A stretch of DNA of 64,000 bases from Pseudomonas aeruginosa PAO1 (GCF_000006765.1 NC_002516.2), one strand, 5' to 3'; shown: positions 745-36,374, counted from the first letter of the stretch. Notes: generated from the sequence alone by a model not told the origin. Numbers and translations: made by a program.

Positions 745-843
745 GTTTCGCGCAGGCGCCCTCCCCCCGGAGCGGCGCCTGCGCCACAATGGTGTCCCCT
801 CTTCGCACGTCCGGCGCGAAAAGGCCCGACACAAGGATTACGG

Positions 844-1830: not shown

Positions 1831-2044
1831 CCGCCCTGCGGCCGCCCGCCGGCGGCCGCTTCCTTCAGCCCTCCCCGCGATACGCGACAACGCCGGCGGC
1901 CCGCCCGTGCCCGGCGCCCATCGTCAAGCTTCAGCGAACAGTGTTTCCGGCCTTCCCCGGTTTATCCCCCGGCGGCGAGTCCACAGGATGTCGCCTTCCG
2001 CTGCCGGCCCCGCCGGCATCCGCCCACAAGGAGGAAACACCTGC

Positions 2045-3031: not shown

Positions 3032-3048
3032 GCCCGAGGAGCCAGACG

Positions 3049-3924: not shown

Positions 3925-3975
3925 CCGCCCCGCCGGCCGTGCGCGCCACGGCCGGCGTCCCGACAAGGAACCAGC

Positions 3976-5478
3976 ATGAGCCATTCCGTCCCCAACGCGC
4001 TGATGACCGGCGCCGACTATCTCGACAGCCTGCGCGACGGTCGCCAGGTCTACCTCAACGGCGAACGGGTCGCCGACGTCACCCGGCACAGGGCGTTCCG
4101 CAACGCCTGCCGCAGCATCGCCGGGCTCTACGACGGCCTCCACGGCGAGCAGCGCGACGTCCTCACCCGGGTCGATGCCCAGGGCCGCCGCAGCCACCGC
4201 TTCTTCACCCCCGCGCAGAACGCCGAGGACCTGCTCGGCGCGCGCGAGGCGATCGGCTGCTGGTCGCGCATGACCTACGGCTTCATGGGGCGTACCCCGG
4301 ACTACAAGGCGGCGTTCATGTCCGGGCTGGAGGCCGGCGCCGGCTTCTACGGCGACTACCGGCATAACGCCTGCGCCTGGCACCGCGCCTTCGCCGACCG
4401 CGGGCTGTTCCTCAACCACGCGATCATCAATCCGCCGCTGGACCGCAGCAAGGCGATCCACGAGATGCGCGACGTGTTCGTCCACGTCGAACGCGAGACC
4501 GACCAGGGTATCGTCGTCAGCGGGGCGAAGATGCTCGCCACCGGCAGCGCCATCACCAACGCCACCTTCGTCGCCCCGGTCGCCTCGGCGCAGATGGAGG
4601 CCGGCAAGGCCGAGGACTTCGCTGTTGTGTTCTTCGCCCGCATGGACAACCCCGGCCTGCGCCTGATGTGCCGGCCATCCTACGAGGAGCGCGCGAGCAG
4701 TCCCTTCGACTATCCGCTGTCCAGCCGCTTCGACGAGAACGACAGCGTGCTGCTGTTCGACAAGGCGCTGATTCCCTGGGAGGACGTCCTGGTCTACCGC
4801 GACCTGCGCCGCGCCACCGGCTTCTATGCCGAGTCGGGCTTCGCCAACCTGTACAACTTCCAGTCCGGCATCCGCCTCGGGGTGAAGCTGGAGCTGATGA
4901 TCGGCCTGCTTTCCCTCGGCGTGCGCGCCAATGGCACCCAGAGCTTCCGCGGGATACAGGCTGCCCTCGGCGAGCTGATCGCCCTGCAGCACCTGCTGCA
5001 GGCGCTGACCACCGCCATGGCCCGCGACCCGGAGCGCAACGCCGCCGGGTCGGCGGTGCCGCGCCTGGAGTACGCCAATGCCCTGCGCATCCAGGTGCCG
5101 CAGATCTGGAAGCGGGTCCGCGAGCTGCTGGAAAGCGCCCTCGGCGGCGCCCCGCTGGTCACCGTCTCGGGCGCCGCCGACCTGCGCGACGGCGAGGCGC
5201 GGCGGCTGGTGGACAGCTACTACCGCGGTGCCGAGCTGGAGCCGGAGCAGCGCCTGAAGCTGTTCAAGCTGATCTGGGACGCCACCGGCAGCGAGTTCGG
5301 CGCGCGCCACGCGGTCTATGAGAGCCATTATTCCGGCAATGCCGAGCAGATCCGCCTCGACTCGCTGGCCTGGGCCAGCCGTCGCGGGCACCTGGCCTAC
5401 TGCGAGGCGATGGTCCAGCGCTGTATGGCCGACTACGACATCCACGGCTGGCTGCGGGGGCCCTGGCAGCATGACTGA
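3976..5478 (+). CDS. pvcC: Flavin-dependent monooxygenase PvcC (HpaB-like)
   Basis: TGADYLDSLRDGRQVYLNGERV and SSRFDENDS, typical of the 4-hydroxyphenylacetate 3-hydroxylase family. Confidence 0.92.
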   Translation: MSHSVPNALMTGADYLDSLRDGRQVYLNGERVADVTRHRAFRNACRSIAGLYDGLHGEQRDVLTRVDAQGRRSHRFFTPAQNAEDLLGAREAIGCWSRMTYGFMGRTPDYKAAFMSGLEAGAGFYGDYRHNACAWHRAFADRGLFLNHAIINPPLDRSKAIHEMRDVFVHVERETDQGIVVSGAKMLATGSAITNATFVAPVASAQMEAGKAEDFAVVFFARMDNPGLRLMCRPSYEERASSPFDYPLSSRFDENDSVLLFDKALIPWEDVLVYRDLRRATGFYAESGFANLYNFQSGIRLGVKLELMIGLLSLGVRANGTQSFRGIQAALGELIALQHLLQALTTAMARDPERNAAGSAVPRLEYANALRIQVPQIWKRVRELLESALGGAPLVTVSGAADLRDGEARRLVDSYYRGAELEPEQRLKLFKLIWDATGSEFGARHAVYESHYSGNAEQIRLDSLAWASRRGHLAYCEAMVQRCMADYDIHGWLRGPWQHD

Positions 5479-6354: not shown

Positions 6355-7293
6355 TCATTCGCTCTGCGCCAGGCGGAACGGCTCGCGACCGAGATGCTCG
6401 CGCAGCGACTCGATGAACGCCCTGACCCGCACCGGCATGTAGCGCGCCGAGGGGTACAGGGCATAGATGCCGCCCTGCGGCAGGCGCCAACCGGGCAGCA
6501 GCCGGACCAGCCGTCCGCGGGCGATCTCGCGGGCTACCAGGAAGCTCGGCAGCACGCTGACGCCGGCACCGTCGAGCACCAGGCGGTACACCGCCAGGGT
6601 GTTGTTCGCCAGCAGGCGCCCTCGGGTCTGTACCGTGGCACGCTCGCGCTGGCGTTCGAAGGTCCAGGTCCAGGGCGTGCTCAGGCGGGTATGGCCGATC
6701 CATTCGCAACGCGCCAGGTCGTGCGGCTGGAGCACCGGCGGCAGGCCGGCGAGGTATCCCGGCGTCGCCACGGCAACCTGCTGGAAGTCGCACAGCTTGC
6801 TGGCATGCAGGCCGGAGTCGCGCGGCCAGCCGATACGTACTGCGAGATCGATGCGCTGGCCGACCAGATCGCTGAACTGGTCATCGGCCAGCATTTCCAC
6901 CTGGACCTTGGGAAACTGCCGGATGAACGCCGCGGAAACGCTGCTGATGTGCCACTTGACGAAGTCCTGCGGCGCGGTGATGCGCAACCGGCCACTGGGC
7001 TCGCCCTGCAGGTCGCGCACATCGGAGAGCGCGCCGTCCAGCTCGCCGAGCATGCGCTGGGCCACGCCGAACAGCAGTTCGCCGCGATCGGTAAGGGTCA
7101 TGCGACGGGTGGTACGGGTCAGCAACTGGATCCCGAGGTCGGCCTCCAGGCGTCGCAACTGCTCGCTGAGTAGCGATTTCGACAAGCCCAGGGCCTCCGC
7201 CGCGGCGGTGAAGCTGTTGTGTTCGGCGACGGCGACGAAGGCATACAAGTGATTCAGGTTCAGATGATTCAATCGCTCCAGGGCGGCGCTCAT
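6355..7293 (-). CDS. ptxR: LysR-family regulator PtxR
   Basis: N-terminal HTH (HLYAFVAVAEHNSFTAAAEAL...SEQLRRLEADLG); 312 aa from ATG 7293; lies between pvcD and ptxS. Confidence 0.92.
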   Translation of the reverse strand: MSAALERLNHLNLNHLYAFVAVAEHNSFTAAAEALGLSKSLLSEQLRRLEADLGIQLLTRTTRRMTLTDRGELLFGVAQRMLGELDGALSDVRDLQGEPSGRLRITAPQDFVKWHISSVSAAFIRQFPKVQVEMLADDQFSDLVGQRIDLAVRIGWPRDSGLHASKLCDFQQVAVATPGYLAGLPPVLQPHDLARCEWIGHTRLSTPWTWTFERQRERATVQTRGRLLANNTLAVYRLVLDGAGVSVLPSFLVAREIARGRLVRLLPGWRLPQGGIYALYPSARYMPVRVRAFIESLREHLGREPFRLAQSE

Positions 7294-7771
7294 CCTGTCA
7301 TTCCTTAGCCGGGAAGTGGGTCCGGACGGGTCTTGTCGAAAAATCCTGCTGCGACGGAACGGCGGCATTCGACAGGACCCGCAACGATCGGTGAGCGTGA
7401 TGACGCGACCGGGCGGTCAGGTCGTCGATAAAGACCGCCAGGCGCGCATAAGTTTCAGCGCGCCACCTTCGTTTTCCGATAAATGAGAACTGCTTCAGAC
7501 GGTCGGCCGGGTGCTTTTCATGTCAGCGAAGCTCGCCTGATTGATCGCTTTCTACCGACAAAACCTTCTTAAAGTAGTTTCTCAAGTATTGGACAAACTT
7601 CCTTTTTATTTATGGAGATATGGCACATTCATTCCATTCGACATTAATAATTGCAAACCATCATTCGAAACGATTATTCGGTTTTCATGAACAACGTCCT
7701 GGCCTCATGCCTGGCTCGGCCCCGGTAGGCGTTTTTTTCCCGTTGACGGGCATCGGCCTTCTGGTATTTTC

Positions 7772-7785
7772 TGAAACCGGTTTCA
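7772..7785. promoter_or_regulatory. PtxS operator upstream of ptxS
   Basis: Perfect palindrome TGAAACCGGTTTCA, the established PtxS site. Confidence 0.9.
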
Positions 7786-7855
7786 ACTCCTGGCATCCGC
7801 TGGCGAAGACCAGCCGGACACACCAATAAGAACAGCACCAAGAGGTACCAGGTCC

Positions 7856-8878
7856 GTGAATGGTTCAGTACTGCCCAGCCGTGGCCGCGTCACCATCAAC
7901 CAGGTGGCCGAGGCCGCCGGCGTCTCCAAGGCCAGCGTGTCGCGCTATATCGGCGGCGACCGCCAGTTGCTCGCCGATGCCACCGCCCGGCGCATCGAGC
8001 GCGCCATCGACCAGCTCGACTACCGCCCCAACCAGATGGCCCGAGGCCTCAAGCGCGGGCGCACACGGCTGATCGGAATGCTGGTGGCGGACATCCTCAA
8101 CCCCTACTCCGTGGCCGTCATGCATGGCGTGGAAACCGCCTGCCGCGAACACGGCTACAGCCTGGTGGTGTGCAATACCGACCGCGACGACGAGCAGGAG
8201 CGTCATCACCTGGCCGCCCTGCAGTCCTACAACGTCGAAGGACTGATCGTGAACACCCTCGGCCACCATCCCGGCGAATTGCGCGCCCTGCACCGCGAAC
8301 TGCCGATGGTGCTGGTGGACCGCCAGTTGGCCGAGCTGGATACCGACCTGGTCGGCCTGGACAACGCCGACGCCGTCGAACAGGCCCTCGACCACCTGCA
8401 GCACCGCGGCTTCCGCGACATCCTGCTGGTCACCGAACCGCTCGACGGCACCAGCTCGCGGATCGAGCGGGTCCAGGCCTTCAATGCCTCCATCGGCCGG
8501 CGACCGGCGCTCAAGGGCCAGGTCCTGCAAACCGACGACTTCTTCCGCGACGGCCTGCGCGCCTTCCTTTCGGCCAGCGGCCCCGGGCCGAAGGCGCTGT
8601 TCACCTGCAACGGCGTCGCCACCCTCTGCGCCACCCGCCAACTGCGCGACCTCGGCTGCCGGCTGTTCGATGAGGTCGGCCTGCTGGCCCTGGACGAACT
8701 CGACTGGTACCCACTGGTGGGCAGCGGCATCACCGCCCTCGCCCAACCCACCGACGAAATCGGCCGCACCGCCTTCGAGCGCCTCCTGGCGCGACTCGAA
8801 GGCGACCGCGAGCCGGCGCGCCGGGTGACCTTCCCGGCGCAACTGATCGTTCGCGGCTCGACCCATCCACGCGGCTAG
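7856..8878 (+). CDS. ptxS: LacI-family repressor PtxS (2-ketogluconate responsive)
   Basis: VTINQVAEAAGVSKASVSRY HTH and YRPNQMARGLK; GTG start; 340 aa. Confidence 0.95.
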   Translation: MNGSVLPSRGRVTINQVAEAAGVSKASVSRYIGGDRQLLADATARRIERAIDQLDYRPNQMARGLKRGRTRLIGMLVADILNPYSVAVMHGVETACREHGYSLVVCNTDRDDEQERHHLAALQSYNVEGLIVNTLGHHPGELRALHRELPMVLVDRQLAELDTDLVGLDNADAVEQALDHLQHRGFRDILLVTEPLDGTSSRIERVQAFNASIGRRPALKGQVLQTDDFFRDGLRAFLSASGPGPKALFTCNGVATLCATRQLRDLGCRLFDEVGLLALDELDWYPLVGSGITALAQPTDEIGRTAFERLLARLEGDREPARRVTFPAQLIVRGSTHPRG

Positions 8879-8922
8879 CGGCCCGCCGCCGGCGCGTTGC
8901 CGGCGGCTTTCGCACGGCTTGA

Positions 8923-10675
<1,753 letters not shown>

Positions 10676-10737
10676 ACCCGCCGCCCACGCGGCACCTGTT
10701 GCGACAAGAACAAGACAAGCTCAGGAGATACCCGACC

Positions 10738-12045
10738 ATGACCATGCCTCGCCTCGCCAGCAGCCGCTGGTGGTACATCATGCCGATCGTTTTCGTCACC
10801 TACAGCCTGGCCTACCTGGACCGCGCCAACTACGGCTTCGCCGCCGCCTCCGGGATGGCCGACGACCTGCGGATCACTCCCGGGCTGTCCTCGCTGCTGG
10901 GCGCGCTGTTCTTCCTCGGTTACTTCTTCTTCCAGGTGCCGGGGGCGATCTACGCGGAAAAGCGCAGCGTCAAGAAGCTGATCTTCGTCAGCCTGATCCT
11001 CTGGGGCGGACTGGCCACCCTGACCGGGATGGTCGCCAACGTCTATCTGCTGATCGGCATCCGCTTCCTCCTCGGCGTGGTCGAGGCGGCGGTGATGCCA
11101 GCGATGCTGGTCTACCTCTGCCACTGGTTCACCCGCGCCGAGCGCTCGCGGGCGAACACCTTCCTGATCCTCGGCAACCCGGTGACCATCCTCTGGATGT
11201 CGGTGGTCTCCGGCTACCTGGTGGAGCATTTCAGCTGGCGCTGGATGTTCATCATCGAAGGCCTGCCGGCGGTGATCTGGGCCTTCATCTGGTGGCGCCT
11301 GGTGGATGACCGCCCGCGCCAGGCCGCCTGGCTGAGCGGCTCGGAAAAACGCGACCTGGAAGACGCCCTGGCCGCCGAGCAGCAGGGCATCAAGCCAGTG
11401 AAGAACTACCGCGAGGCGTTCCGTTCGCCAAAGGTCATCGTCCTCTCGCTGCAGTACTTCTGTTGGAGCATCGGCGTCTATGGCTTCGTCCTCTGGCTGC
11501 CGTCGATCCTCAAGCACGGTGCCAACATCGACATCATAGAAGCCGGCTGGCTGTCGGCGCTGCCCTACCTGGCGGCGGTGATCGCCATGCTCGGGGTGTC
11601 CTGGGCCTCGGACCGGTTGCAGAAACGCAAGCGTTTCGTCTGGCCGCCGCTGCTCATCGCGTCCATCGCCTTCTACGGTTCCTACGCCCTCGGCAGCGAG
11701 CACTTCTGGCTGTCCTACGCCCTGCTGGTGCTGGCCGGGGCCTGCATGTACGCGCCCTACGGACCGTTCTTCGCCATCGTCCCGGAAGTCCTCCCGGCCA
11801 ACGTCGCCGGCGGCGCCATGGCGCTGATCAACAGCATGGGCGCGCTGGGCTCGTTCTCCGGCTCCTGGCTGGTCGGCTACCTGAACGGCATCACCGGCGG
11901 GCCCGGGGCTTCCTATCTGTTCATGAGCGGAGCGCTGCTGCTGTCGGTGCTGCTCACCGTGTTCCTCAACCCGCACGCCGACAAGCGCGAGCCCGATGCC
12001 GCTCGCGCGCACGCCTCGCGGCGGGCGGCGCCGGCCCACCCCTGA
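10738..12045 (+). CDS. kguT: MFS 2-ketogluconate transporter
   Basis: YLDRANYGFA (ACS family), about 12 TM segments; ATG after AGGAG. Confidence 0.9.
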   Translation: MTMPRLASSRWWYIMPIVFVTYSLAYLDRANYGFAAASGMADDLRITPGLSSLLGALFFLGYFFFQVPGAIYAEKRSVKKLIFVSLILWGGLATLTGMVANVYLLIGIRFLLGVVEAAVMPAMLVYLCHWFTRAERSRANTFLILGNPVTILWMSVVSGYLVEHFSWRWMFIIEGLPAVIWAFIWWRLVDDRPRQAAWLSGSEKRDLEDALAAEQQGIKPVKNYREAFRSPKVIVLSLQYFCWSIGVYGFVLWLPSILKHGANIDIIEAGWLSALPYLAAVIAMLGVSWASDRLQKRKRFVWPPLLIASIAFYGSYALGSEHFWLSYALLVLAGACMYAPYGPFFAIVPEVLPANVAGGAMALINSMGALGSFSGSWLVGYLNGITGGPGASYLFMSGALLLSVLLTVFLNPHADKREPDAARAHASRRAAPAHP

Positions 12046-26977: not shown

Positions 26978-28261
26978 ATGCTGATCGCCTTCGCCATCTT
27001 CCTGTTCACCCTGGTCCTGGTCATCTGGCAGCCCAGGGGCCTCGGCATCGGCTGGAGCGCCAGCATCGGTGCCCTGCTCGCCCTGGCGCTGGGCAGCGTC
27101 GCGCCGGGCGACATCCCGACCGTCTGGAACATCGTCTGGAATGCCACCGCCACCTTCATCGCGGTGATCGTCATCAGCCTGCTGCTGGACGAGGCCGGCT
27201 TCTTCGAATGGGCCGCGCTGCACGTCGCGCGCTGGGCTGGCGGCGACGGCCGGCGCCTGTTCGCCTTCTGCGTGCTGCTCGGCGCGGCGGTCTCGGCGCT
27301 GTTCGCCAACGACGGCGCGGCGCTGATCCTCACGCCCATCGTGATGTCGATGCTGCTGGCCCTGCGCTTCAGCCCGGCGGCGACCCTGGCCTTCGTCATG
27401 GCGGCGGGCTTCATCGCCGACAGCGCCAGCCTGCCGCTGGTGGTCTCGAACCTGGTGAACATCGTCTCGGCCGACTACTTCGGGCTCGGCTTCGGCGAGT
27501 ACGCCGCGGTCATGCTGCCGGTAAACCTGGTGAGCGTCGCGACCTCCCTGCTGGTGCTGTTCCTCTATTTCCGCCGCGACCTGCCGCCGGTCTATGCGCT
27601 GGAGCAATTGAAGCCGCCGCGGGCGGCGATCCGCGACCGCGCGACCTTCGTCGTCGGTGGCTGGATGCTGCTGGTCCTGCTCGCCGGGCTGTTCGCCCTG
27701 GAGCCGCTGGGCGTCCCCGTCAGCGCGGTGGCCGCGGCCTGTGCGGCGCTGCTGCTGGCGGTGGCCGGGCGCGGGCGGGTGATCTCGACCCGGCGGGTGC
27801 TGCGCGAAGCGCCCTGGCAGATCGTGGTCTTCTCGCTGGGCATGTACCTGGTGGTCTACGGCCTGAAGAACGCCGGTCTCACCGACCTCCTGGCGCAGCT
27901 CCTGAACCGCCTGGCCGAGCACGGCGTATGGGCGGCCGCGCTGGGTACCGGACTGCTTTCCGCCGCCCTCTCGTCGGTAATGAACAACATGCCCAGCATG
28001 CTGCTCGGCGCCCTGTCGATCCAGGCCAGCGACACCGCCGGCGCGGTGCGCGAAGCGATGATCTACGCCAACGTCATCGGCTGCGACCTGGGTCCGAAGA
28101 TCACCCCTATCGGCAGCCTGGCGACGCTGCTCTGGCTGCACGTGCTGGCGCGCAAAGGCATGCGCATCACCTGGGGCTACTACTTCAGGGTCGGCGCCCT
28201 GCTGACCCTGCCGGTCCTGCTGGCGACCCTTTCGGCCCTGGCCCTGCGCCTGGCCATCTGA
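26978..28261 (+). CDS. arsB: Arsenite efflux pump
   Basis: [11 protein letters not shown] and [17 protein letters not shown]. Confidence 0.95.
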
Positions 28262-28292
28262 CGGCCGCCGGCGACGGCGGCAGGAGCATCCC

Positions 28293-28763
28293 ATGCGAGT
28301 CCTGTTCATGTGCACGGCCAACAGTTGCCGCAGCATTCTTTCCGAAGCCATGTTCAACCACCTGGCCCCGCCGGGTTTCGAGGCATGCAGCGCCGGCAGC
28401 CAGCCCAGCGGGCGGGTGCATCCGCGCAGCCTGGCGACCCTCGAACAGGCCGGCATCGCCACCCACGGCCTGTACAGCAAGGGCAGCGAAGCCTTCGAAG
28501 GCGCACCACCGGACATCGTCATCACCGTTTGCGACGCCGCCGCGGGGGAAGCCTGCCCGCTGTATCTCGGCGCAGCGCTGAAGGCCCATTGGGGCCTGGC
28601 CGATCCCTCCGCCCTGGATGGCGACGAAGCCCTGCGGGATGCGGCGTTCCACGCCACCCTGGCACGCATCGAACAGCGTTGCCGAGCCTTCCTCGGCCTG
28701 CCCTTCGCTACCCTGGATCGCGACCAGCTCAAGCGTGAGCTGGAGCGCATCGGCTCGCTCTGA
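28293..28763 (+). CDS. arsC: Arsenate reductase, LMW-PTPase (thioredoxin) type
   Basis: CTANSCRS P-loop with resolving Cys in TVCD and EACP. Confidence 0.92.
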
Positions 28764-28774
28764 CCGGAGGAAGC

Positions 28775-29467
28775 ATGTCCGAACAACTACCCAACCTCGA
28801 TCCCGCGCTGCTCGGCGACCCGCCCCCCGTCTCCGGGCACAGGCCGCGCATCCTCCTGCTCTACGGCTCGACCCGCGAGCGCTCCTTCAGCCGCCTGCTG
28901 GTGCTGGAGGCCGCACGCCTGCTCGAACGCTTCGGTGCCGAAACGCGGATTTTCGACCCTTCCGGGCTGCCATTGCCCGATGATGCACCGGTGGAGCATC
29001 CCAAGGTCCGCGAGTTGCGCGACCTGGTGCAGTGGTCGGAAGGCCAGGTCTGGTGCTCGCCCGAGCGCCACGGTGCGCTGTCCGCGGTATTCAAGGCGCA
29101 GATCGACTGGATTCCCCTGGCACTCGGGGCGGTGCGCCCGACCCAGGGCAAGACCCTGGCGCTGATGCAGGTCTGCGGCGGCTCGCAGTCGTTCAACGTG
29201 GTCAACCAGTTGCGCGTGCTGGGTCGCTGGATGCGCATGTTCACCATCCCCAACCAGTCCTCGGTTCCCAAGGCCTACCTGGAGTTCGACGAAGCGGGCC
29301 GGATGAAGCCATCGCCCTACTACGACCGGGTGGTCGACGTGATGGAGGAGTTGTTCAAGTTCACCCTGCTCCTGCGCGAGCGCACGGACTTCCTGGTGGA
29401 CCGCTATTCGGAGCGCAAGGAAAGCGCCGAGCAGCTTTCCGCGCGGGTCGACCAGCGTTCGCTCTGA
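28775..29467 (+). CDS. arsH: ArsH NADPH-dependent FMN reductase / organoarsenical oxidase
   Basis: [21 protein letters not shown] and VCGGSQSFN. Confidence 0.95.
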
Positions 29468-29479
29468 ACCGCGTCCGCC

Positions 29480-30424
29480 TCACTCGCGCCCCGGCGGATG
29501 GCCGAAGCGCGCGCGGTAGGCATGGGTGAAGTTTTCCGGACTGGAGTAACCCAGGCGATAGGCTATCTGCGCGATCTGCCAGCGACCCTCGCGGACCATC
29601 TGCCGGCCGATCTCGAGACGCCGGTCGCGGACGTACTGCAACATCGAGCGACCGAACTCGTTCTTGAAAATCCGCCGCAGGGTGGTTTCGCCGACCCCCA
29701 GTTGGCGCGCCAGTTCGAGGCTGGCCGGCGGCTCACCGAGGTTCGCCTCCAGCAGGCGGCGCGCTTCATGGGCCAGGTCGCGCTGGGCGCGTGGGGTGCG
29801 CGCGCGACGAAGGTCCGCGCCGCCCAGGTAGGCGGCCAGCTCCACCAGCAGGCCCAGGGTCAGGCTCTCTTCGTGCAGGCGTCCGAGGGCGCCGCGGTAT
29901 GGATTCTGGTAGAGGCGCTCGAACAGGGCGGTGATGGCGCCGCAACGGGACAACTGGGTAAAGCTCGCGCCGTCGCCCTTCAGCCGCGCCAGCGGCCGCA
30001 GGGCGCCATCGCCGGTTTCCAGTTCCTCTTCCAGATAGCTGGCGGCGATCCGCAGCCCGCCCAGGCGCACGCGGCTGCCCGCCGGCAGGATATCGAAGGC
30101 CTCCATCGGCTCGCCGGTGCCGAGCACCGAAGGACCGCCCAGGTTGTAGAGATAAGGCTCGCCGCCGTCGACGCTGTGCCGCCACTGGCCGTCGAACATC
30201 TGCACGATGCACAGGCCTTCCGGCAGCACCTTGTGGGTTCGCAGCGGCTCGGTGAAGCTCAGGTCGCAATCGAAATACTGCATCGACGGGCGCACCGTCC
30301 GCGCCTGGTAGTGACCGGTGGCGCTGCCGAGCATTTCGCGCGCGTCGAGGATCTGCGACTGGCTCAGGGGTGAAGGAGCGTCGAAATAGAGCTCCGTGTC
30401 GTGGTAGGGATTCCAGCTTTCCAT
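29480..30424 (-). CDS. AraC-family regulator (PchR-like), divergent from the M48 operon
   Basis: LARQLGVGETTLRRIFKNEFG and LGYSSPENFTHAYRARFG. Start codon uncertain. Confidence 0.85.
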   Translation of the reverse strand: MESWNPYHDTELYFDAPSPLSQSQILDAREMLGSATGHYQARTVRPSMQYFDCDLSFTEPLRTHKVLPEGLCIVQMFDGQWRHSVDGGEPYLYNLGGPSVLGTGEPMEAFDILPAGSRVRLGGLRIAASYLEEELETGDGALRPLARLKGDGASFTQLSRCGAITALFERLYQNPYRGALGRLHEESLTLGLLVELAAYLGGADLRRARTPRAQRDLAHEARRLLEANLGEPPASLELARQLGVGETTLRRIFKNEFGRSMLQYVRDRRLEIGRQMVREGRWQIAQIAYRLGYSSPENFTHAYRARFGHPPGRE

Positions 30425-30621
30425 GGCGTAGGTATCGGTGGGACGCAACCATCTGAACCGGTTCAGGCAGCGGCTTTCCAGGATGGTTCCGTGCGCTGAT
30501 CGAACCGAACCTGTGGGCGACGACGCTTTTCCTGTGAGCGGCGGCCGCCTCGGTTGTTCGTGGCTCGCGCCTGTATTAATAGATGCGCCCCTTTTACATC
30601 GCGTTGCCAAAGGGGGCGAGA

Positions 30622-31050
30622 ATGATAGCAAAGTGGACTGCGGCACTGCTGATGGGCGCACTGGCGTGGGGATCCTGCACGGCGCAGGCCGAAGAGGCGC
30701 GGCCGCCAGTCGCCGACAAGGTGGTGGCCTACCAGGGCCAGCAGGGGCTCAAGGTCTGGACCCTGCGTATCGGCGAAGCGGCGGCCGGCGAAGCGCTGTT
30801 GCAGGTCGAAGGTCTGGACCACGACTGGGACCGCCTGATCCACAAGGTAAAGGTGGAAAAGAGCGCCAGGGACAGTCGCTACTCCACCGAACTGAACGGC
30901 AGCAAGTATGTGATCCTGATCGTGCGCGACGGCTGGGGCGAGCTCTACCTGCCCGGCGAACAGCAGACGCGGCAGGTCGCCTATAGCGAGTCGCTGTCGT
31001 CCGCAGGCGAGCCCCAGGCATTCCTGACCGACTACCTCGAGCAGAAATAA
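30622..31050 (+). CDS. Secreted/periplasmic hypothetical protein, 142 aa
   Basis: Sec signal MIAKWTAALLMGALAWGSCTAQA-EE, typical codon usage, first gene of the operon. Confidence 0.8.
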   Translation: MIAKWTAALLMGALAWGSCTAQAEEARPPVADKVVAYQGQQGLKVWTLRIGEAAAGEALLQVEGLDHDWDRLIHKVKVEKSARDSRYSTELNGSKYVILIVRDGWGELYLPGEQQTRQVAYSESLSSAGEPQAFLTDYLEQK

Positions 31051-31056
31051 ACGCGG

Positions 31057-32514
31057 ATGAGCCACGATACGCTGCGGGTAAGGCTGCTCGCATTCCTCTT
31101 CCTGATTCCCCTGGCGCTCTACGCCTGGTCCGCCGTGCAGGCCTTCCGGGTCGACTCGACCCTGCGCGACGAACAGTTCATGCGCGACTGGAGCGCCTCG
31201 GTGCGCAACGACCCGGACGCCGCCGGCGCCATTCCCCGTCACCTGTTCCGTCCGGCCTATGGCGTCGAAGGTCATCTTCACCAGTTCGCCGAAGACGCCG
31301 AGGCCATCCGCCGCGACCATCCTTGGCTGGCTCTGCGCGGCTGGCTGGCCGCTATCGGCAAGCTCTGCGCGCTGGCGTCGGCGCTGGTCGCGGCCGCCTT
31401 GCTGGCGAGACTGGAATACGACGGGCGCCGCTCGATGCGCTCGCAAGCCTACCTGCTCGGCCACCTCGCGCCGGCCTGGCGGCGCCTCGGTCGACTAGTC
31501 CCGCTGCACGCCGGCCTGCTGGTCGCCGCCCTGGCCAGCCAGTTGCTCTACGAAGCGCTGTGGAGCTACAGCCACTGGCACAGCCACGGCTTCGTCGCCC
31601 TGCTCTTCTCACTGCCGCTGTGGCTGCTGTTCCTCGGCGGCCTGCTCATGCTGCGGCGCCTGCGCGGCGAACTGCTGCCGCTGGAGGAACCGGTGCTCCA
31701 CCTGCTCGGCCGCGAACTCGACCGCGTCGCCGCGCCCGGCCTCTGGCAATGGCTGGGACAGATCGCCGACCGCGCCGGAGCGCCGCTACCGGACCATGTC
31801 GTCACCGGCATCGAGCACTGCTACTTCGTCACCCAGGCCAAGGTCCTGCTGGCACCCCGCGGCATTCCGCTGGAGGGGCGTACCCTGTACATCCCGCTGA
31901 CCTATGCCTCGGTCATGAGCGAGGCCGAAAGCGCCGCGATCATCGGCCACGAACTGGGCCACTTCGCCGCCGGCGACACCGCCCACGGTGCATCCCTGTC
32001 GCTCCTGCAGCGGCAGGTGCGCCTGCGCATCGACCGCATCGCCGCCCCCGAAGTTGGGCATGTCGGCCTGCTCGGCAAGCCGGGCCTGTGGGCCGCGCTG
32101 TACTTCCTCGATCGCTTCGAGCGCGCCTACCTGCACTGGAATCGCCGCCAGGAACTGGCCGCCGACAAGGTCGGGGCGCGGGTAGCCGGCGCGCGGGTCT
32201 TCGCCATCGCGCTGCTACGCACCTGCGCCCTTGCAGGACTGATCGAACGCCTGCTGGCCAGCCCGCAGACGCGCAACCTGGTGCATGCGCTGACCGACCA
32301 TCTGCGCGGGAACTCCCTGGAACTGGACGAACAGGACAGCGCTCGCCGCCTGGAACACCCCTTCGACAGTCACCCGCCGACCTACCAGCGGATCGCGGAC
32401 CTTTCCCTGGCGCTCGACGACGATCTGCTGCGACAGGCAAGGCGCATCGTCAGCGCCGACGACACGCAGTGGCTCAACCGCCTGCTCGATGCAGGCCACG
32501 GGGAAAGCCGGTGA
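31057..32514 (+). CDS. M48 (HtpX-like) membrane Zn-metalloprotease, copy 1
   Basis: About 4 TM segments, then IIGHELGHF (HExxH), RRQELAAD and DSHPP. Confidence 0.85.
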   Translation: MSHDTLRVRLLAFLFLIPLALYAWSAVQAFRVDSTLRDEQFMRDWSASVRNDPDAAGAIPRHLFRPAYGVEGHLHQFAEDAEAIRRDHPWLALRGWLAAIGKLCALASALVAAALLARLEYDGRRSMRSQAYLLGHLAPAWRRLGRLVPLHAGLLVAALASQLLYEALWSYSHWHSHGFVALLFSLPLWLLFLGGLLMLRRLRGELLPLEEPVLHLLGRELDRVAAPGLWQWLGQIADRAGAPLPDHVVTGIEHCYFVTQAKVLLAPRGIPLEGRTLYIPLTYASVMSEAESAAIIGHELGHFAAGDTAHGASLSLLQRQVRLRIDRIAAPEVGHVGLLGKPGLWAALYFLDRFERAYLHWNRRQELAADKVGARVAGARVFAIALLRTCALAGLIERLLASPQTRNLVHALTDHLRGNSLELDEQDSARRLEHPFDSHPPTYQRIADLSLALDDDLLRQARRIVSADDTQWLNRLLDAGHGESR

Positions 32515-33182
32515 TCCCGCCGGGCGCGCAAACGCCCTGCCCCGCCGGGACAAGGGGCGACGAAGCCACGCAGTTGCGGCGCTTCGTCGCCAGCGTCCCC
32601 AACCGGATAAGCATCGGCGCCGCCCGTGGCGCGGCGCCGCTGTCCGCCCTGCTCGGCCTGCTGCTGCTCGGCGGCGCCTGGACCTTGCGCGACCACCCCG
32701 GTCCCGGCCATGAGGCGGCGGCGCTGTGCCTGCTGGCGGCGGCCGCCCTCCTCATGTGCCTGGCCTGCCTGCAGCGCAACGCCAGGAGCGCGCCGTTCCT
32801 CGTCCTCGGCCAGGGGCGCCTGCGCGCCCGCAGCCTGTCGGCGCCGCTGGACCTGCTGGAGGTCGCCGACCTGCGCCTGGAGGACGGGGTCTGGTTCTCC
32901 GCGATAGTCCTCGAACTGCACGGCAAGGCGCTACCGGCACCATCCACGCGCCCGCTCGATCCGTTCGCCGCGCGTGCCGTCAGCGAATGCCGGGACGGCC
33001 CACGGGTTCGCCTGCTGTCCCCCGGCTGGCGCCTCAACGGTCGCAACCTGTCGCTACTGGAAGCCGCGGAGGTCATCGACCTCTACCTGGACATCGCCCG
33101 CGCCCAGGCCCGGCTCCGCCAACTGGGCGAGATCCCGCCCAGTGCTTCCTCTTCACTCCCAACTCCAAGGATATTTCCATGA
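32511..33182 (+). CDS. Two-TM membrane protein, paralogue A
   Basis: GTGA start/stop overlap with the M48 gene; TM hairpin then soluble domain ending in a conserved helix. Confidence 0.7.
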   Translation: MIPPGAQTPCPAGTRGDEATQLRRFVASVPNRISIGAARGAAPLSALLGLLLLGGAWTLRDHPGPGHEAAALCLLAAAALLMCLACLQRNARSAPFLVLGQGRLRARSLSAPLDLLEVADLRLEDGVWFSAIVLELHGKALPAPSTRPLDPFAARAVSECRDGPRVRLLSPGWRLNGRNLSLLEAAEVIDLYLDIARAQARLRQLGEIPPSASSSLPTPRIFP

Positions 33183-33841
33183 GCAACCAGGAACCCCGGG
33201 ACCTCGTCTCCAACCTCGCCGAAACCCTCGGTGCCGAACACGAAGAGCTGAACCAGGCGAAGACCGCCGAGGTCATCGCCCACCTGGAGCGGGTGATCGC
33301 CAACGTACCGCCGGCCACCGAGTTCACCAATACCCGCAAGTACGTGGTGCTGGGTCCGCTGCTGAGCATCGTGCCCTTCATCATGACCGGCATGTGGTTC
33401 TCCCAGGGCAAGCCGGGGGTCGGCGTCGTCGGCTTGCTGCTCGGCCTGTTCGGGCTGTTCCTCGGCTACCAGCATCGCAACTCCGGCAAGACCCCCTTCA
33501 TGCGCCTGACCCGTACCCAGCTCTGGGCCGACAGCCTGTCGGCTCCGGTCGAGCTGGCCGACGTCATCGATTTCAGCGTCAAGGCCGACATGCTGCAAAC
33601 CACCCAGACCCTCCACCTGCGGCCCGAAACGCCGCTGCCGACCCATCGCGCCGTACGCCAGGTGTTCGCCTCCCAGGCCATGGCCTTCAAAGGCAAGGAC
33701 CCGCGCATCACCATCATGTCGGCCGGCCTGCAGAGCGATGGCAAGAAGCTGGACTGCGACGACATGGCGGCGATCCTCGACGCCTACATCCAGGCCGCCC
33801 ACGCCCAGCGCTACCTGCAACAACTGCGCAGCCAGGGCTGA
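33179..33841 (+). CDS. Two-TM membrane protein, paralogue B
   Basis: ATGA overlap with AAGGA upstream; TM hairpin then soluble domain. Confidence 0.8.
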   Translation: MSNQEPRDLVSNLAETLGAEHEELNQAKTAEVIAHLERVIANVPPATEFTNTRKYVVLGPLLSIVPFIMTGMWFSQGKPGVGVVGLLLGLFGLFLGYQHRNSGKTPFMRLTRTQLWADSLSAPVELADVIDFSVKADMLQTTQTLHLRPETPLPTHRAVRQVFASQAMAFKGKDPRITIMSAGLQSDGKKLDCDDMAAILDAYIQAAHAQRYLQQLRSQG

Positions 33842-35386
33842 GTGAAGGGCACGGTCCATCCGCGAAGGCTGCTGCTTTGCCTGGTGCTGGTTCCAGCGCT
33901 GCTGGCGGGGCTCGGCGCCTGGCAGTCCTGGCGCGCCGAGCAGCAGGCCGAGCGACTGGGCGCCGCGCAGCAGCGGGTCGAGCGCGCGCTCGCCGAAGCG
34001 CGGGCGCTGCCGCCGAGGGCCAGCGTCCGGGTGGACGGCCGGGCCTATGTGCGCGACCTGGCCCTGGCGCGGCTCGACGAGCGACTCGCCGACACACGAA
34101 GCGCACAGCGCCTGAGTCGCTTCGCCGCCGTCCTCGCCGATAGCGGAGCCTGCCTGGCGGCGCTGGTCGCCGTATTGGGAGCCGTCTCCCTGGCCGGCAT
34201 CGCCGGCGCCGCACGCAGCGCACTGCGCTCGCGTCGCTGCCTGCTCCTGTGGTTCGAGCTGGGCCGACGCCTGCTGCCCTGCCTGCTCCTCGCCCAGATC
34301 GGCCTGCTCGCCCTGGCCCTGGCCTGTGCCGGAACGTTCGAGATCCTCGGGCTGTGGCGGGTCGGCCAGGTTCCGGTCAGCGAAGGACGCACCCAACTGA
34401 GCGTGGCGCTGATCCTTCTCGGCCTGCTGGCGTCGGCGTGGCAAATGCTGGCGAAGATCAGCCGCTTGCGCCTGCGCCCGGCGCCGGCCCTGGATGTCAT
34501 CGGCCGCCGGCTGGGCGAAGAGGATGCACCGGAACTCTGGACGCTACTGCGCGAGCTGGCGGCGCGCCTCGACACGCCAGCCCCGCAGCACCTGTTGGTA
34601 GGTCTCTGCGACGGCTTCTACGTGACCGCCAACCGCGTCTGCCTGCAACCTTCCGGCGAGCATCTGGAAGGACGCAGCCTATACCTCTCGCTACCGTTGC
34701 TGGGCCTGCTGGACCGCGCCGAACTGAGTGCAGTGATCGCTCACGAACTGGCCCACTTCGCCGGCCGCGACGCCCATTACAGCCTGCGCTTCCTGCCGAT
34801 CTACCAGGGCGCCGCGAGCCAACTGGCCGCCATCGAGGAGCAGGAAGCCAACGTCTTCGAACGTGCGGCACTGGAACCGGCGCGACTGTTGGCCGGGTAC
34901 TTCCTCGAACGTTTCGGCCTCGCCGTGAACCACTGGAGCCGCCTGCGCGAATTCGCCGCCGACCGCCGCGCCGCACAACTGGCCGGTGCGCCGGCGATGG
35001 CCTCGGCCCTGCTGCGCAGCGCGGCGGCCGGCGCGCCGATACGGGCGTTCCTCGAACACTGCCTGCTCGCTCCGGCGCGCGCGCCGGACAACCTGGTGGA
35101 CGCCATCCACGTCTACCTGGGCCAGTCCGGCCTGGAAGCACCGGCCCCCGGGGCGGAGGGACTCCAGGTCCATCCGCAGGATACCCACCCTCCGCTGGGC
35201 CTGCGCTGCACGGCGCTGGGAGAGAGCTTCGAACGCACCTGGGCCGGGACCGCCGGCCGGGCCGTTCCGACACGACCGCCGAGCCAGGCGCTGGGCGTCT
35301 GGTTCGGCGCCCCCCTGGCGTTGAGCCGAGCGCTCAGCGCCGACCTGCTCGGCAAGACCTGTGAGAATCCCCATGCAAGAAACTGA
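33842..35386 (+). CDS. M48 (HtpX-like) membrane Zn-metalloprotease, copy 2
   Basis: VIAHELAHF, RLREFAAD and DTHPP; GTG start abuts the upstream stop. Confidence 0.85.
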   Translation: MKGTVHPRRLLLCLVLVPALLAGLGAWQSWRAEQQAERLGAAQQRVERALAEARALPPRASVRVDGRAYVRDLALARLDERLADTRSAQRLSRFAAVLADSGACLAALVAVLGAVSLAGIAGAARSALRSRRCLLLWFELGRRLLPCLLLAQIGLLALALACAGTFEILGLWRVGQVPVSEGRTQLSVALILLGLLASAWQMLAKISRLRLRPAPALDVIGRRLGEEDAPELWTLLRELAARLDTPAPQHLLVGLCDGFYVTANRVCLQPSGEHLEGRSLYLSLPLLGLLDRAELSAVIAHELAHFAGRDAHYSLRFLPIYQGAASQLAAIEEQEANVFERAALEPARLLAGYFLERFGLAVNHWSRLREFAADRRAAQLAGAPAMASALLRSAAAGAPIRAFLEHCLLAPARAPDNLVDAIHVYLGQSGLEAPAPGAEGLQVHPQDTHPPLGLRCTALGESFERTWAGTAGRAVPTRPPSQALGVWFGAPLALSRALSADLLGKTCENPHARN

Positions 35387-36008
35387 CGAAACCCTCGACG
35401 AACTGCCGCCGCTGGAAGCCCGCTGCGAGATCCGCGAGGTCTCGCGGGGCACCGCCTGCGTTGCCCTGCTCGCTGGCCTGGTGGCTGGCGCCACCGGTCT
35501 CTGGCTCGCTTCGCTGCCCAACGCCTGGCGCCTGGCCAGTGGCCAATGGCTGTTCTGGCTGCCAGCCGCGCTGCTGCTGGGCGGCGGCCTGTACGCCTGC
35601 CTGGCGGGCGTGTTCCTCTACCGGCGCCACGGCCAGGTCGCGCTCACCCTGACGCCGGAGAGCATCGCCTTCGCCAACGCGCCGCAGGTGCCGATGTACA
35701 CCTTCCAGTCGCTGGAGATCGAGCGCGGGCGCTGGCTGGAACTCACCTTCGCGACCACCTTCGATTGCACGGCACCGCGCTTCGACAGCCATGCCCGTTT
35801 CGACCCGCGGGCTTTCGCCCGCCCCGAAGCCCGCGCGGTGGCCGGCGGCAAGCGGGTCAAGCTGGCGCTGTGCGGCGCCGCGCTGAACGGCCAGAAAATG
35901 GAGCTGGAGCCGCTCGCACGACTGATCTACCGGTACATCCTCGCCGGCCATCGCCAGCGCGCCCTGCAACATCATCGCGCGCCCGGGAGCGACGGCAGCG
36001 GGGCCTGA
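35373..36008 (+). CDS. Two-TM membrane protein, paralogue C
   Basis: Overlaps the end of M48 copy 2 and has the same architecture. Alternative GTG start at 35361. Confidence 0.75.
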   Translation: MQETDETLDELPPLEARCEIREVSRGTACVALLAGLVAGATGLWLASLPNAWRLASGQWLFWLPAALLLGGGLYACLAGVFLYRRHGQVALTLTPESIAFANAPQVPMYTFQSLEIERGRWLELTFATTFDCTAPRFDSHARFDPRAFARPEARAVAGGKRVKLALCGAALNGQKMELEPLARLIYRYILAGHRQRALQHHRAPGSDGSGA

Positions 36009-36020
36009 AGCGAGCAACGC

Positions 36021-36308
36021 TCAGGCTGCGCGCTGGCGTTGCCAGTCCACCGCGGCTTTCAGGCGCGCCACCACCTTGCGCACGAAGAGCGGGTCGTCCG
36101 CCACGCAGAGCTCCGCGCTGACCCACTCCGGCCAGCCGGTTCCCTGGCGCTCGCGAGCCCCCAGCAGGCGCTCGACTTCGTCGCGCACGGCGCGCTCCAG
36201 GCGTTCGCTGGCACGATTGCGGGACAGGTGGAGGCGCAGGCAGGCCTGTTTCTCGCGCTCCAGGGCGTGGCGTCGGGACAGCGGCAGTTCGGCAAGGTTG
36301 TGGCTCAT
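36021..36308 (-). CDS. Small hypothetical protein (95 aa), probably SOS-regulated
   Basis: AAGGAG RBS and a LexA box about 40 bp upstream. Confidence 0.75.
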   Translation of the reverse strand: MSHNLAELPLSRRHALEREKQACLRLHLSRNRASERLERAVRDEVERLLGARERQGTGWPEWVSAELCVADDPLFVRKVVARLKAAVDWQRQRAA

Positions 36309-36340: not shown

Positions 36341-36374
36341 TTCCGATTACTGTACATTCATACAGTAATCGGAA
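36341..36374. promoter_or_regulatory. LexA (SOS) box inside a 14-bp-arm inverted repeat
   Basis: CTG-TACATTCATA-CAG at 36350-36365; arms TTCCGATTACTGTA / TACAGTAATCGGAA. Confidence 0.85.

What the first reader, a model, noticed from the sequence alone, without database searches (positions are those of the whole stretch)
30622..36008. Candidate undescribed system: six-gene coupled operon with two paralogous M48 membrane proteases
The genes are joined by a 6-bp gap, GTGA and ATGA overlaps, an abutting TGA/GTG and a 14-bp overlap, indicating translational coupling. The two proteases align motif by motif: GRELDRVAAPGLW / GRRLGEEDAPELW; LEGRTLYIPL / LEGRSLYLSL; IIGHELGHF / VIAHELAHF; RRQELAAD / RLREFAAD; DSHPP / DTHPP. 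All Zn ligands are intact, but the N-terminal periplasmic loops differ completely. Each protease is followed by one or two members of a small membrane-protein family. The layout (exported protein, protease plus two partners, protease plus one partner) suggests a modular regulated-proteolysis, envelope-surveillance or anti-toxin/anti-phage system with diversified sensing loops. Function is not evident from the sequence, and I know of no characterisation.
Basis: partly seen in the sequence, partly recalled or inferred. Interest (0 to 1): 0.78.

Follow-up and report, generated by a model that had tools for sequence, protein, structure and literature searches.

The report
Split membrane protease persister operon PA2282–PA2287
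This is a real six-gene operon of Pseudomonas aeruginosa, already published as a DNA-damage-induced operon that promotes antibiotic persistence; my new result is that its small membrane proteins are detached pieces of the neighbouring zinc proteases, which other bacteria make as one fused protein.

Summary
Six + strand genes (30622-36008) are joined by exactly the stated gaps and overlaps. Two are paralogous M48 zinc proteases with intact catalytic residues, and three belong to one small membrane-protein family.

The claim that the system is undescribed does not hold. By gene order this is the P. aeruginosa operon PA2282-PA2287. Papers citing Long et al. 2019 report that it is induced in ciprofloxacin persisters and that PA2285 and PA2287 (genes 4 and 6 here) bind RNA polymerase (RpoC) and FtsZ. 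A 2026 paper reports UV-C induction outside the LexA-like regulons.

New here:
- In P. syringae, Roseomonas, Sphingomonas, Bosea, Methylobacterium and Morganella the protease and the partner are one ~720-aa protein.
- Among 143 representative proteins carrying the partner module, 79 are fused to this M48 clade and none to any other domain.
- The module is a helix, a transmembrane hairpin and a probably PH-like cytoplasmic domain.
- Pseudomonas carries split versions: a divergent AraC regulator, an exported protein, an M48 protease and one to three partners. Some loci have lost the protease.

No evidence supports an anti-phage or T6SS role.

Best model: a split membrane protease whose PH-like module binds cytoplasmic clients and stalls growth after DNA damage. 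What the protease does is still unknown.

The parts
29480..30424 (-). Divergently transcribed AraC-family regulator (PA2281 by gene order), the likely regulator of the operon
   Evidence: Pfam HTH_18 2e-20 and HTH_AraC 6e-11. Orthologues sit divergently upstream of g1 in P. flavescens L030, P. extremorientalis L013 and P. putida L037 (E 1e-111 to 1e-120). The start at 30424 is inferred from the lengths of homologues (314-329 aa); the mechanical ORF runs on to 30661.
30510..30543 (.). Two CCTGTG(G/A)GCG direct repeats, 21 bp start to start, in the araC-g1 intergenic region; candidate AraC-type operator
   Evidence: Direct repeat D1. The two TGTG cores are invariant in an alignment of the region upstream of g1 from five loci. 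That they bind the regulator is inference.
30622..31050 (+). g1 (PA2282): exported 142-aa protein of unknown fold
   Evidence: Signal peptide ending AQA|EE. No Pfam, NCBIfam or PADLOC family. 84 homologue clusters, in Pseudomonas and Superficieibacter. It leads the split operons in L013, L030, L034 and L037 and occurs alone in L038 and L039.
31057..32514 (+). g2 (PA2283): membrane M48 zinc protease 1, 'split' type, with four N-terminal transmembrane helices and a cytoplasmic catalytic domain
   Evidence: Pfam PF01435 8.4e-13. H298-E-x-x-H302 and E366 read from the alignment. Transmembrane segments at 10-28, 97-115, 147-165 and 179-197. Groups with the proteases of the split operons in a rough NJ tree.
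32511..33182 (+). g3 (PA2284): partner module, the most diverged copy (transmembrane hairpin plus cytoplasmic domain)
   Evidence: E 4e-17 to g4. Matches the partner profile at 1.5e-45. Transmembrane segments 35-53 and 69-87. The GTG start is inferred from the GTGA overlap.
33179..33841 (+). g4 (PA2285): partner module, made of an N-terminal helix, a transmembrane hairpin, and a PH-like beta-sandwich with a C-terminal helix
   Evidence: AF2 model with pLDDT 87.6 and pTM 0.76. The best Foldseek PDB hits are mostly PH-superfold domains, but all are weak (E > 0.07). Homologous to residues ~620-722 of the fused P. syringae protein (E 2e-12). Published as binding RpoC and FtsZ.
33842..35386 (+). 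g5 (PA2286): membrane M48 zinc protease 2, closest to the fused-type proteins
   Evidence: Pfam PF01435 3.3e-15. H301-E-x-x-H305, E370 and H444-P-x-D-x-H-P are invariant columns. 35-39% identical to fused proteins and 29-30% to split-type proteases. The 514-aa form is found on at least 1000 P. aeruginosa contigs.
35373..36008 (+). g6 (PA2287): partner module corresponding to the C-terminal ~200 aa of the fused proteins
   Evidence: E 6e-11 to residues 595-722 of the fused P. syringae protein. Matches the partner profile at 2.7e-48. Groups with the third partner of P. flavescens and with fused C-termini. Published as binding RpoC and FtsZ.

Best explanation
The locus is the P. aeruginosa operon PA2282-PA2287. 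Each 'protease plus small protein' set is a split version of a single ~720-aa inner-membrane protein that other proteobacteria make in one piece.

The fused protein has these parts in order: four transmembrane helices with a periplasmic helical stalk; a cytoplasm-facing M48 zinc-protease domain; a linker helix; a transmembrane hairpin; and a PH-like cytoplasmic domain capped by a long helix. The small proteins g3, g4 and g6 are therefore the protease's own C-terminal module, set free and duplicated.

Working model:
1. After DNA damage (ciprofloxacin, UV-C) the operon is switched on. This probably happens through the divergent AraC-type regulator acting on two conserved TGTG repeats, not through LexA.
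2. The PH-like modules, held at the membrane, bind cytoplasmic clients. The published clients are FtsZ and the RNA polymerase beta-prime subunit. Binding stalls division and transcription and gives the persister phenotype.
3. The M48 domain works in the same complex on whatever the module holds, either the module itself or its bound client.

Shown here: homology, the fusion, topology, fold class and distribution. Taken from papers: induction and the binding partners. Inferred: that the PH-like domain is the client-binding part, that the AraC regulator controls the operon, and any proteolytic step at all.
For: Fusion:
- Homologues of g5 and g2 in P. syringae, Roseomonas, Allosphingosinicella, Mangrovicella and others are 709-748 aa.
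- Their last ~200 residues are homologous to g6 (E 6e-11) and g4 (E 2e-12), and align over the whole partner length.
- Ten genome loci carry the fusion; nine as a single ORF (L001-L009), and L010 has it split into two ORFs.
- A profile of the module finds 398 clusters. Of the 143 best representatives, 62 are full-length fusions and 17 are truncated fusions to this M48 clade, 63 stand alone, and none is fused to another domain.

Topology and structure:
- Positive-inside analysis puts the catalytic and PH-like domains in the cytoplasm.
- The fused protein models well (pLDDT 84.6, pTM 0.69), as does g4 alone (87.6).
- Foldseek hits are dominated by PH/PTB folds.

Split operons with the same layout occur in P. 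flavescens, P. extremorientalis, P. putida and a metagenome contig.

Regulation:
- The TGTG repeats are conserved.
- There is no LexA box in the promoter.
- UV-C induction outside the LexA-like regulons is reported in PMC12796719.

Published function: induction in persisters and RpoC/FtsZ binding by PA2285 and PA2287 (PMC13041383 and PMC8065639, both citing Long et al. 2019).
Against: - No substrate of either protease is known.
- I could not read the primary paper, so the binding data reach me second-hand.
- The PA numbers are assigned by gene order, not by a tool result.
- The PH-like assignment rests on weak Foldseek scores (best E 0.08, target-normalised TM-score (TMt) about 0.4) and no Pfam match.
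- Partners exist without any adjacent protease (L033, L034, L036), and the published phenotype needs only the partner. The protease is therefore dispensable for at least part of the function.
- I could not inspect domain contacts in the models.
Confidence: 0.5

Rival explanations
1. Arrest factor plus dedicated off-switch. The small proteins are self-sufficient growth-arrest effectors, and the M48 proteases exist to destroy them. This limits arrest and allows regrowth, as Lon does for SulA and as DdcP/CtpA do for YneA in Bacillus (comparison from my own knowledge).
For: Overexpressing the partner alone gives the published phenotype. Partner-only loci exist. The genes are tightly coupled, which would keep their amounts in step. 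The catalytic residues are intact in both proteases.
Against: Fusing an arrest factor permanently to its destroyer, as in at least 79 of the 143 representatives, is hard to reconcile with a simple antidote role unless the fusion cuts itself. No cleavage product or cleavage site is known. Loss of the protease in L034 and of the second protease in P. flavescens would then leave an unchecked inhibitor.
Confidence: 0.25
2. Sensor-transducer protease in the manner of BlaR1/MecR1. The periplasmic stalk, together with exported g1, senses an envelope signal. This activates the cytoplasmic M48 domain, which clips the partner and releases its PH-like domain into the cytoplasm.
For: The architecture has a periplasmic loop followed by a cytoplasmic zinc protease. 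An exported protein leads the split operons. There is a faint Pfam M56 match at the HExxH region.
Against: The M56 score is 12.6 bits against a cut-off of 31. There is no penicillin-binding or other recognisable sensor domain. The fused forms lack g1. The known inducers are DNA-damaging agents, not envelope stress. The stalk is short, ~65 aa.
Confidence: 0.1
3. Ordinary HtpX-like membrane-protein quality control, with the small proteins as accessory subunits that have no specific clients.
For: M48 family membership. Weak NCBIfam HtpX matches. The catalytic domain is cytoplasmic, as in HtpX (the HtpX topology is from my own knowledge).
Against: The HtpX equivalog scores are 18-40 bits against cut-offs of 245-422. 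The family is rare (398 clusters among 1.84 billion representatives) and its distribution is patchy. Induction is by DNA damage, and specific binding partners have been published.
Confidence: 0.1
4. Anti-phage defence or T6SS-linked immunity system.
For: The fused P. syringae homologue lies beside tssE/F/G and vipA/B. One PHROGs family of unknown function matches the M48 region of g5.
Against: No PADLOC match for any of the six proteins. No viral structural match. Other loci have unrelated neighbours such as ars genes, TonB receptors and ABC transporters. The locus sits in a conserved chromosomal context on at least 1000 P. aeruginosa contigs, unlike a mobile defence island.
Confidence: 0.03

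Closest known systems
The PA2282-PA2287 (PA14_35060-PA14_35010) persister operon of P. aeruginosa (Long et al. 2019, J Antimicrob Chemother 74:2575, as cited in PMC13041383 and PMC8065639)
   Same: It is the same locus. The six genes lie in the same order between the ars genes with an AraC regulator on one side, and the small DNA-damage-induced gene, a TonB-dependent receptor and gcd on the other. The proteins are annotated as P. aeruginosa hypothetical proteins and M48 peptidases.
   Different: The citing papers describe only PA2285 and PA2287, as proteins that bind RpoC and FtsZ. They do not mention the fusion with the proteases, the PH-like fold, the paralogy of PA2284, the AraC repeats or the distribution. 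I could not read the primary paper, so I cannot say whether it covers any of these.
HtpX (M48B membrane quality-control protease)
   Same: M48 fold, HExxH plus Glu zinc site, N-terminal membrane anchor, cytoplasmic active site.
   Different: Scores fall far below the HtpX equivalog cut-offs. This family also has a longer N-terminal region with a periplasmic stalk, an extra C-terminal hairpin plus PH-like module, and DNA-damage induction.
BlaR1/MecR1 (M56 sensor-transducer proteases)
   Same: The general plan of a membrane-embedded zinc protease with an extracytoplasmic part and a cytoplasmic catalytic part.
   Different: Pfam M56 is not met (12.6 bits; cut-off 31). There is no sensor domain and no BlaI-type repressor next door; an AraC-type regulator is there instead.
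DNA-damage division inhibitors with a dedicated protease (SulA-Lon; YneA-DdcP/CtpA; SidA and DidA) - comparison from my own knowledge
   Same: Induced by DNA damage, aimed at the division machinery, small membrane-anchored proteins, and a protease in the picture.
   Different: No sequence relationship. Induction here is reported to be independent of LexA-like repressors. The protease and the small protein are one polypeptide in most relatives. RNA polymerase is reported as a second target.
Bacterial PH-domain proteins of the YdbS/YdbT type (Pfam bPH_2, PF03703) - lead from my own knowledge
   Same: A transmembrane hairpin followed by a small beta-sandwich with a C-terminal helix. PH/PTB folds lead the structural hits, and one faint viral hit is named 'Bacterial PH domain protein'.
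   Different: None of the 13 family members matches any Pfam family at E <= 10 other than noise. The structural scores are weak.

Membership tests
Peptidase family M48 (Pfam PF01435) | Profile score above the gathering threshold | tested here: met
   g2 49 bits and g5 56.8 bits; cut-off 20.3.
Peptidase family M48 (Pfam PF01435) | HExxH zinc motif plus a downstream Glu ligand | tested here: met
   g2 H298/E299/H302/E366 and g5 H301/E302/H305/E370. These columns are invariant in alignments of 12 and 20 sequences.
HtpX (NCBIfam equivalogs NF002826, NF003965 and others) | Score above the equivalog cut-off | tested here: not met
   Best score 40 bits against a cut-off of 369 (g5), and 17.8 bits against 245 (g2).
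BlaR1/MecR1 (Pfam Peptidase_M56) | Profile score above the gathering threshold, plus an extracytoplasmic sensor domain | tested here: not met
   12.6 bits against 31 for g2 and no hit for g5. No other domain was detected.
Fused M48 + hairpin + PH-like family (unnamed; defined here) | Protease part aligns end to end with the ~720-aa proteins | tested here: met
   g5 is 35-39% identical over 88-99% of its length. g2 gives E 1e-42 over 392 aa. Profile E values are 1e-170 to 1e-185.
Fused M48 + hairpin + PH-like family (unnamed; defined here) | C-terminal module present, either fused or encoded immediately downstream | tested here: met
   g3, g4 and g6 match the module profile at 1e-45 to 1e-64. 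Pairwise E values to the fused P. syringae protein are 6e-11 and 2e-12.
Bacterial PH domain (Pfam bPH_2 and PH superfold) | Sequence profile match | tested here: not met
   No PH-type Pfam family for any of the 13 members, even at E <= 10.
Bacterial PH domain (Pfam bPH_2 and PH superfold) | Seven-stranded sandwich capped by a C-terminal helix that superposes on solved PH/PTB domains | tested here: inconclusive
   The model has 7-8 strands plus helix 193-219. PH/PTB hits lead the list (probability up to 0.90), but E >= 0.08 and the target-normalised TM-score (TMt) is about 0.4.
SOS (LexA) regulon | CTGT-N8-ACAG box in the promoter region | tested here: not met
   The only match in the 64-kb window is at 36350-36365, upstream of the neighbouring 95-aa gene on the - strand. 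The literature also places the operon outside the LexA-like regulons.
Known anti-phage defence systems (PADLOC-DB 2.0) | Any component profile match | tested here: not met
   Zero families at E <= 1 for all six proteins.
Type II toxin-antitoxin module | Small toxin with an adjacent small DNA-binding or neutralising antitoxin | tested here: not met
   The layout is membrane proteases of ~500 aa plus membrane proteins of ~220 aa. No antitoxin-type domains were found. Whether the protease neutralises the partner cannot be tested with these tools.

The most novel reading that the evidence does not exclude
The fused M48 + hairpin + PH-like proteins (about 400 clusters, in alpha- and gamma-proteobacteria among the loci sampled) may be an unrecognised class of stress-gated membrane proteases. 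In this reading the PH-like domain captures core cytoplasmic machines (FtsZ, RNA polymerase) at the membrane, and the protease sets the length of the growth arrest. P. aeruginosa would then be a naturally dissected version, in which the capture module has been freed, triplicated and placed under an AraC-type DNA-damage circuit independent of LexA.
Probability: 0.3. Interest if true: 0.7.

Novelty: already known. Interest (0 to 1): 0.42.

Why it matters
Persister cells are a main reason why P. aeruginosa infections relapse. This operon is one of the few loci reported to drive persistence through defined targets.

The published account, as relayed by the citing papers I could read, treats two of the small proteins as stand-alone inhibitors and says nothing about the two proteases. 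If the small proteins are the proteases' own detached domain, the whole operon can be read as one machine. The roughly 400 related clusters, mostly single fused genes in plant- and soil-associated bacteria, then become natural comparators for working out what the protease does.

The locus is also a compact example of DNA-damage-responsive genes outside the LexA, AlpR and PrtR circuits.

Tried and rejected
- Reading the primary paper (doi 10.1093/jac/dkz214): not held. I relied on three papers that cite or discuss it.
- Pfam, NCBIfam, PADLOC and PHROGs for g1 and the partners: nothing usable.
- PDB sequence searches with the partner and protease profiles: no significant hit.
- Foldseek with the full fused model: only long-helix noise, a prefoldin-like match to the stalk and one PTB domain. 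The viral library gave nothing significant.
- LexA box in the operon promoter: absent. The sigma-70 promoter scan found nothing, and the three terminator-like hits lie inside or at the start of genes and are no more than chance predicts.
- The 14-bp palindrome CTGAACCGGTTCAG in the intergenic region: considered as an operator, but it is not conserved in the other species.
- T6SS linkage: seen in one locus only.
- A mention of 'PA2285' as AmrZ in PMC3985676: this looks like a mislabel, and I disregarded it.
The fused relatives served for that comparison instead.

Full report
**The observation.** The window is high-GC Pseudomonas DNA. Protein searches name the organism as P. aeruginosa. On the + strand between 30622 and 36008 lie six ORFs:

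| Gene | Coordinates | Length |
|---|---|---|
| g1 | 30622-31050 | 142 aa |
| g2 | 31057-32514 | 485 aa |
| g3 | 32511-33182 | 223 aa |
| g4 | 33179-33841 | 220 aa |
| g5 | 33842-35386 | 514 aa |
| g6 | 35373-36008 | 211 aa |

Reading the junctions base by base confirms the 6-bp gap, the GTGA and ATGA overlaps, the TGA|GTG abutment and the 14-bp overlap.

- g2 and g5 both pass Pfam Peptidase_M48. They align at 33% identity over about 260 residues (E 1e-26), and every quoted motif is in the alignment.
- The zinc ligands and a C-terminal H-P-x-D-x-H-P motif are invariant across the family.
- g3, g4 and g6 are paralogues (E 4e-17, 1e-6 and 0.002).
- g1 has a Sec signal peptide whose Cys is not conserved in homologues.
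- The N-terminal parts of g2 and g5 are much diverged, but they share the same four-helix architecture and a few invariant residues. 'Differ completely' is therefore too strong.

**The locus is already in the literature.**
- The flanks match the PAO1 map around PA2278-PA2290, which I recall from memory. Upstream are arsB, arsC, arsH and an AraC-family gene. Downstream are a 95-aa gene, a TonB-dependent receptor and a PQQ glucose dehydrogenase. On that map the six genes are PA2282-PA2287. This assignment is by gene order, not by a tool result.
- PMC13041383 and PMC8065639 summarise Long et al. 2019: the operon PA2282-PA2287 (PA14_35060-PA14_35010) is strongly induced in cells surviving ciprofloxacin. 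PA2285 and PA2287 bind RpoC and FtsZ and inhibit them, and overexpressing either raises survival about 100-fold.
- PMC12796719 lists PA2284, PA2285 and PA2287 among UV-C-induced genes that belong to none of the three LexA-like regulons.
- The primary paper is not in the library.
- So 'no characterisation' is wrong. In the papers I could read, the two proteases, g1 and PA2284 are not discussed.

**What the small proteins are.**
- The g4 family looked tiny in the word-indexed search (17 hits).
- The search with g5 then returned proteins at 34-41% identity, most of them 689-748 aa, from P. syringae, Roseomonas, Allosphingosinicella, Plastoroseomonas and Mangrovicella. That is about 200 residues longer than g5.
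- The extra tail is homologous to the partners: g6 against the P. syringae protein gives E 6e-11 and g4 gives E 2e-12.
- A joint alignment matches the partners over their whole length: the pre-membrane helix, the hairpin, the globular domain and the terminal helix.
- A genome scan found the fusion in Pseudomonas spp., Roseomonas, Sphingomonas, Bosea, Morganella and Methylobacterium (ten loci, one of which has it in two ORFs). More distant M48 proteins lack the module.
- An exhaustive profile search found 398 clusters (201 at E <= 1e-10). Of the 143 best representatives, 62 are full-length fusions to this M48 clade, 17 are truncated fusions, 63 stand alone and one is unclear. None is fused to any other domain.
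- This is a classic gene-fusion argument that protease and partner work together.

**Shape and topology.**
- Hydrophobicity and charge analysis places the M48 domain and the partners' ~125-aa C-terminal domain in the cytoplasm. A ~65-aa loop between the first two protease helices faces the periplasm.
- AlphaFold models are confident: the fused P. syringae protein has pLDDT 84.6 and pTM 0.69, and g4 has pLDDT 87.6.
- The globular domain has seven or eight strands followed by a long helix. Foldseek against the PDB gives only weak scores, but PH-superfold domains dominate the top of the list: Pob3, ORP8 PH, GRK2 PH and CCM2 PTB, with probability up to 0.90. I call it PH-like, with reservations.
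- Pfam has no model for the module, and PDB sequence searches find nothing.
- The periplasmic stalk resembles a prefoldin-type helical hairpin.

**How the operon is built in relatives.**

| Organism or locus | Layout |
|---|---|
| P. extremorientalis (L013) | araC, g1, M48, one partner |
| P. flavescens (L030) | araC, g1, M48, three partners; no second protease |
| P. putida (L037) | araC, g1, M48 (called as two ORFs), two partners |
| Metagenome contig L034 | g1 and two partners; no protease |
| L035 | M48 and one partner only |
| L033, L036 | lone partners |
| L038 (Superficieibacter-like), L039 (P. yamanorum) | g1 alone |

- In rough NJ trees g2 groups with the split-operon proteases, whereas g5 falls inside the fused clade. 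g6 groups with the third partner of P. flavescens, near the fused C-termini.
- P. aeruginosa therefore looks like a core split operon (g1-g4) followed by a second, more fused-like pair (g5-g6).
- The partners clearly keep a function without a protease, which fits the published partner-only phenotype.

**Regulation.**
- The araC-g1 intergenic region has no LexA box.
- It carries two CCTGTG(G/A)GCG repeats 21 bp apart. Their TGTG cores are invariant across five loci. This spacing is typical of AraC-family sites (from my own knowledge).
- The AraC gene is conserved in divergent orientation.
- That this regulator mediates the DNA-damage response is inference.

**Mechanism.** My preferred reading is a split membrane protease whose PH-like module is the client-binding part. 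The modules hold FtsZ and RNA polymerase at the membrane and stall growth. The protease acts within that complex, but its substrate is unknown.
- The main rival is that the protease is simply the off-switch that removes the arrest factor. Permanent fusion in most relatives sits less easily with this.
- A BlaR1-like sensor-transducer and plain HtpX-like quality control are possible but less well supported.
- An anti-phage or T6SS role has essentially no support.

**Verdict.**
- The system is already known as a persister-promoting operon, so its novelty as a system is low.
- What adds value here is the fusion evidence, the fold assignment, the family census and the candidate operator. Together they give a testable frame for the uncharacterised proteases.

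Noticed in passing
window 36350-36365, upstream of the - strand ORF 36021-36308: A perfect LexA-type box (CTGT-N8-ACAG), the only one in the 64-kb window, lies within a longer palindrome just upstream of a 95-aa gene convergent with the operon. By gene order this gene is PA2288. Papers list PA2288 as induced by hydrogen peroxide and use it as a ciprofloxacin reporter alongside lexA and dinB. An SOS gene thus sits directly beside the LexA-independent operon.
   Followed up: partly
window 35373-35386; L030 7265-7278; L035 5001-5014: The same 14-bp ATG...stop overlap occurs at the protease-to-partner junction in P. aeruginosa g5/g6, in P. flavescens and in a metagenome-derived locus, and the partner N-termini are similar. 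This hints at a single ancestral split, which sits awkwardly with the rough tree that places g5 among the fused proteins.
   Followed up: partly
L037 (P. putida) 6433-7880; L010 (Morganella psychrotolerans) 7444-9602: In these two genomes the protease (L037) or the fused gene (L010) is called as two consecutive ORFs instead of one. This could be gene decay or assembly error. It was not examined further.
   Followed up: no
L029 (P. syringae) 1-5300 and 9771-11705: The fused homologue stands alone on its strand between a T6SS sheath/baseplate cluster (tssG, tssF, tssE-like, vipB, vipA) and a RecQ-type helicase gene. No such neighbours were seen in the other loci.
   Followed up: partly
window 26978-29467: An arsenic-resistance cluster (arsB, an arsC of the low-molecular-weight phosphatase type, and an arsH-like FMN reductase) lies immediately upstream of the AraC gene. 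The same arrangement is seen on another P. aeruginosa contig.
   Followed up: yes
fused model mc51637382f75, residues ~3-128 (equivalent to g5 residues ~10-128, window ~33870-34225): The periplasmic part is predicted as two very long helices continuous with transmembrane helices 1 and 2 and joined by a small beta-hairpin. It matches archaeal prefoldin subunits (probability 0.99, target-normalised TM-score (TMt) 0.70). Its function is unknown.
   Followed up: no
L001 (Pseudomonas sp. KK4) 11233-11598: A 122-aa ORF matching only the middle of the partner module (E 3e-11) lies about 1 kb downstream of the fused gene. It may be a remnant of a second copy.
   Followed up: no
literature: PMC3985676: This paper calls a transposon hit 'PA2285' and says it encodes AmrZ. 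That does not fit the membrane protein encoded here, and it is probably a locus-tag error in the paper.
   Followed up: no
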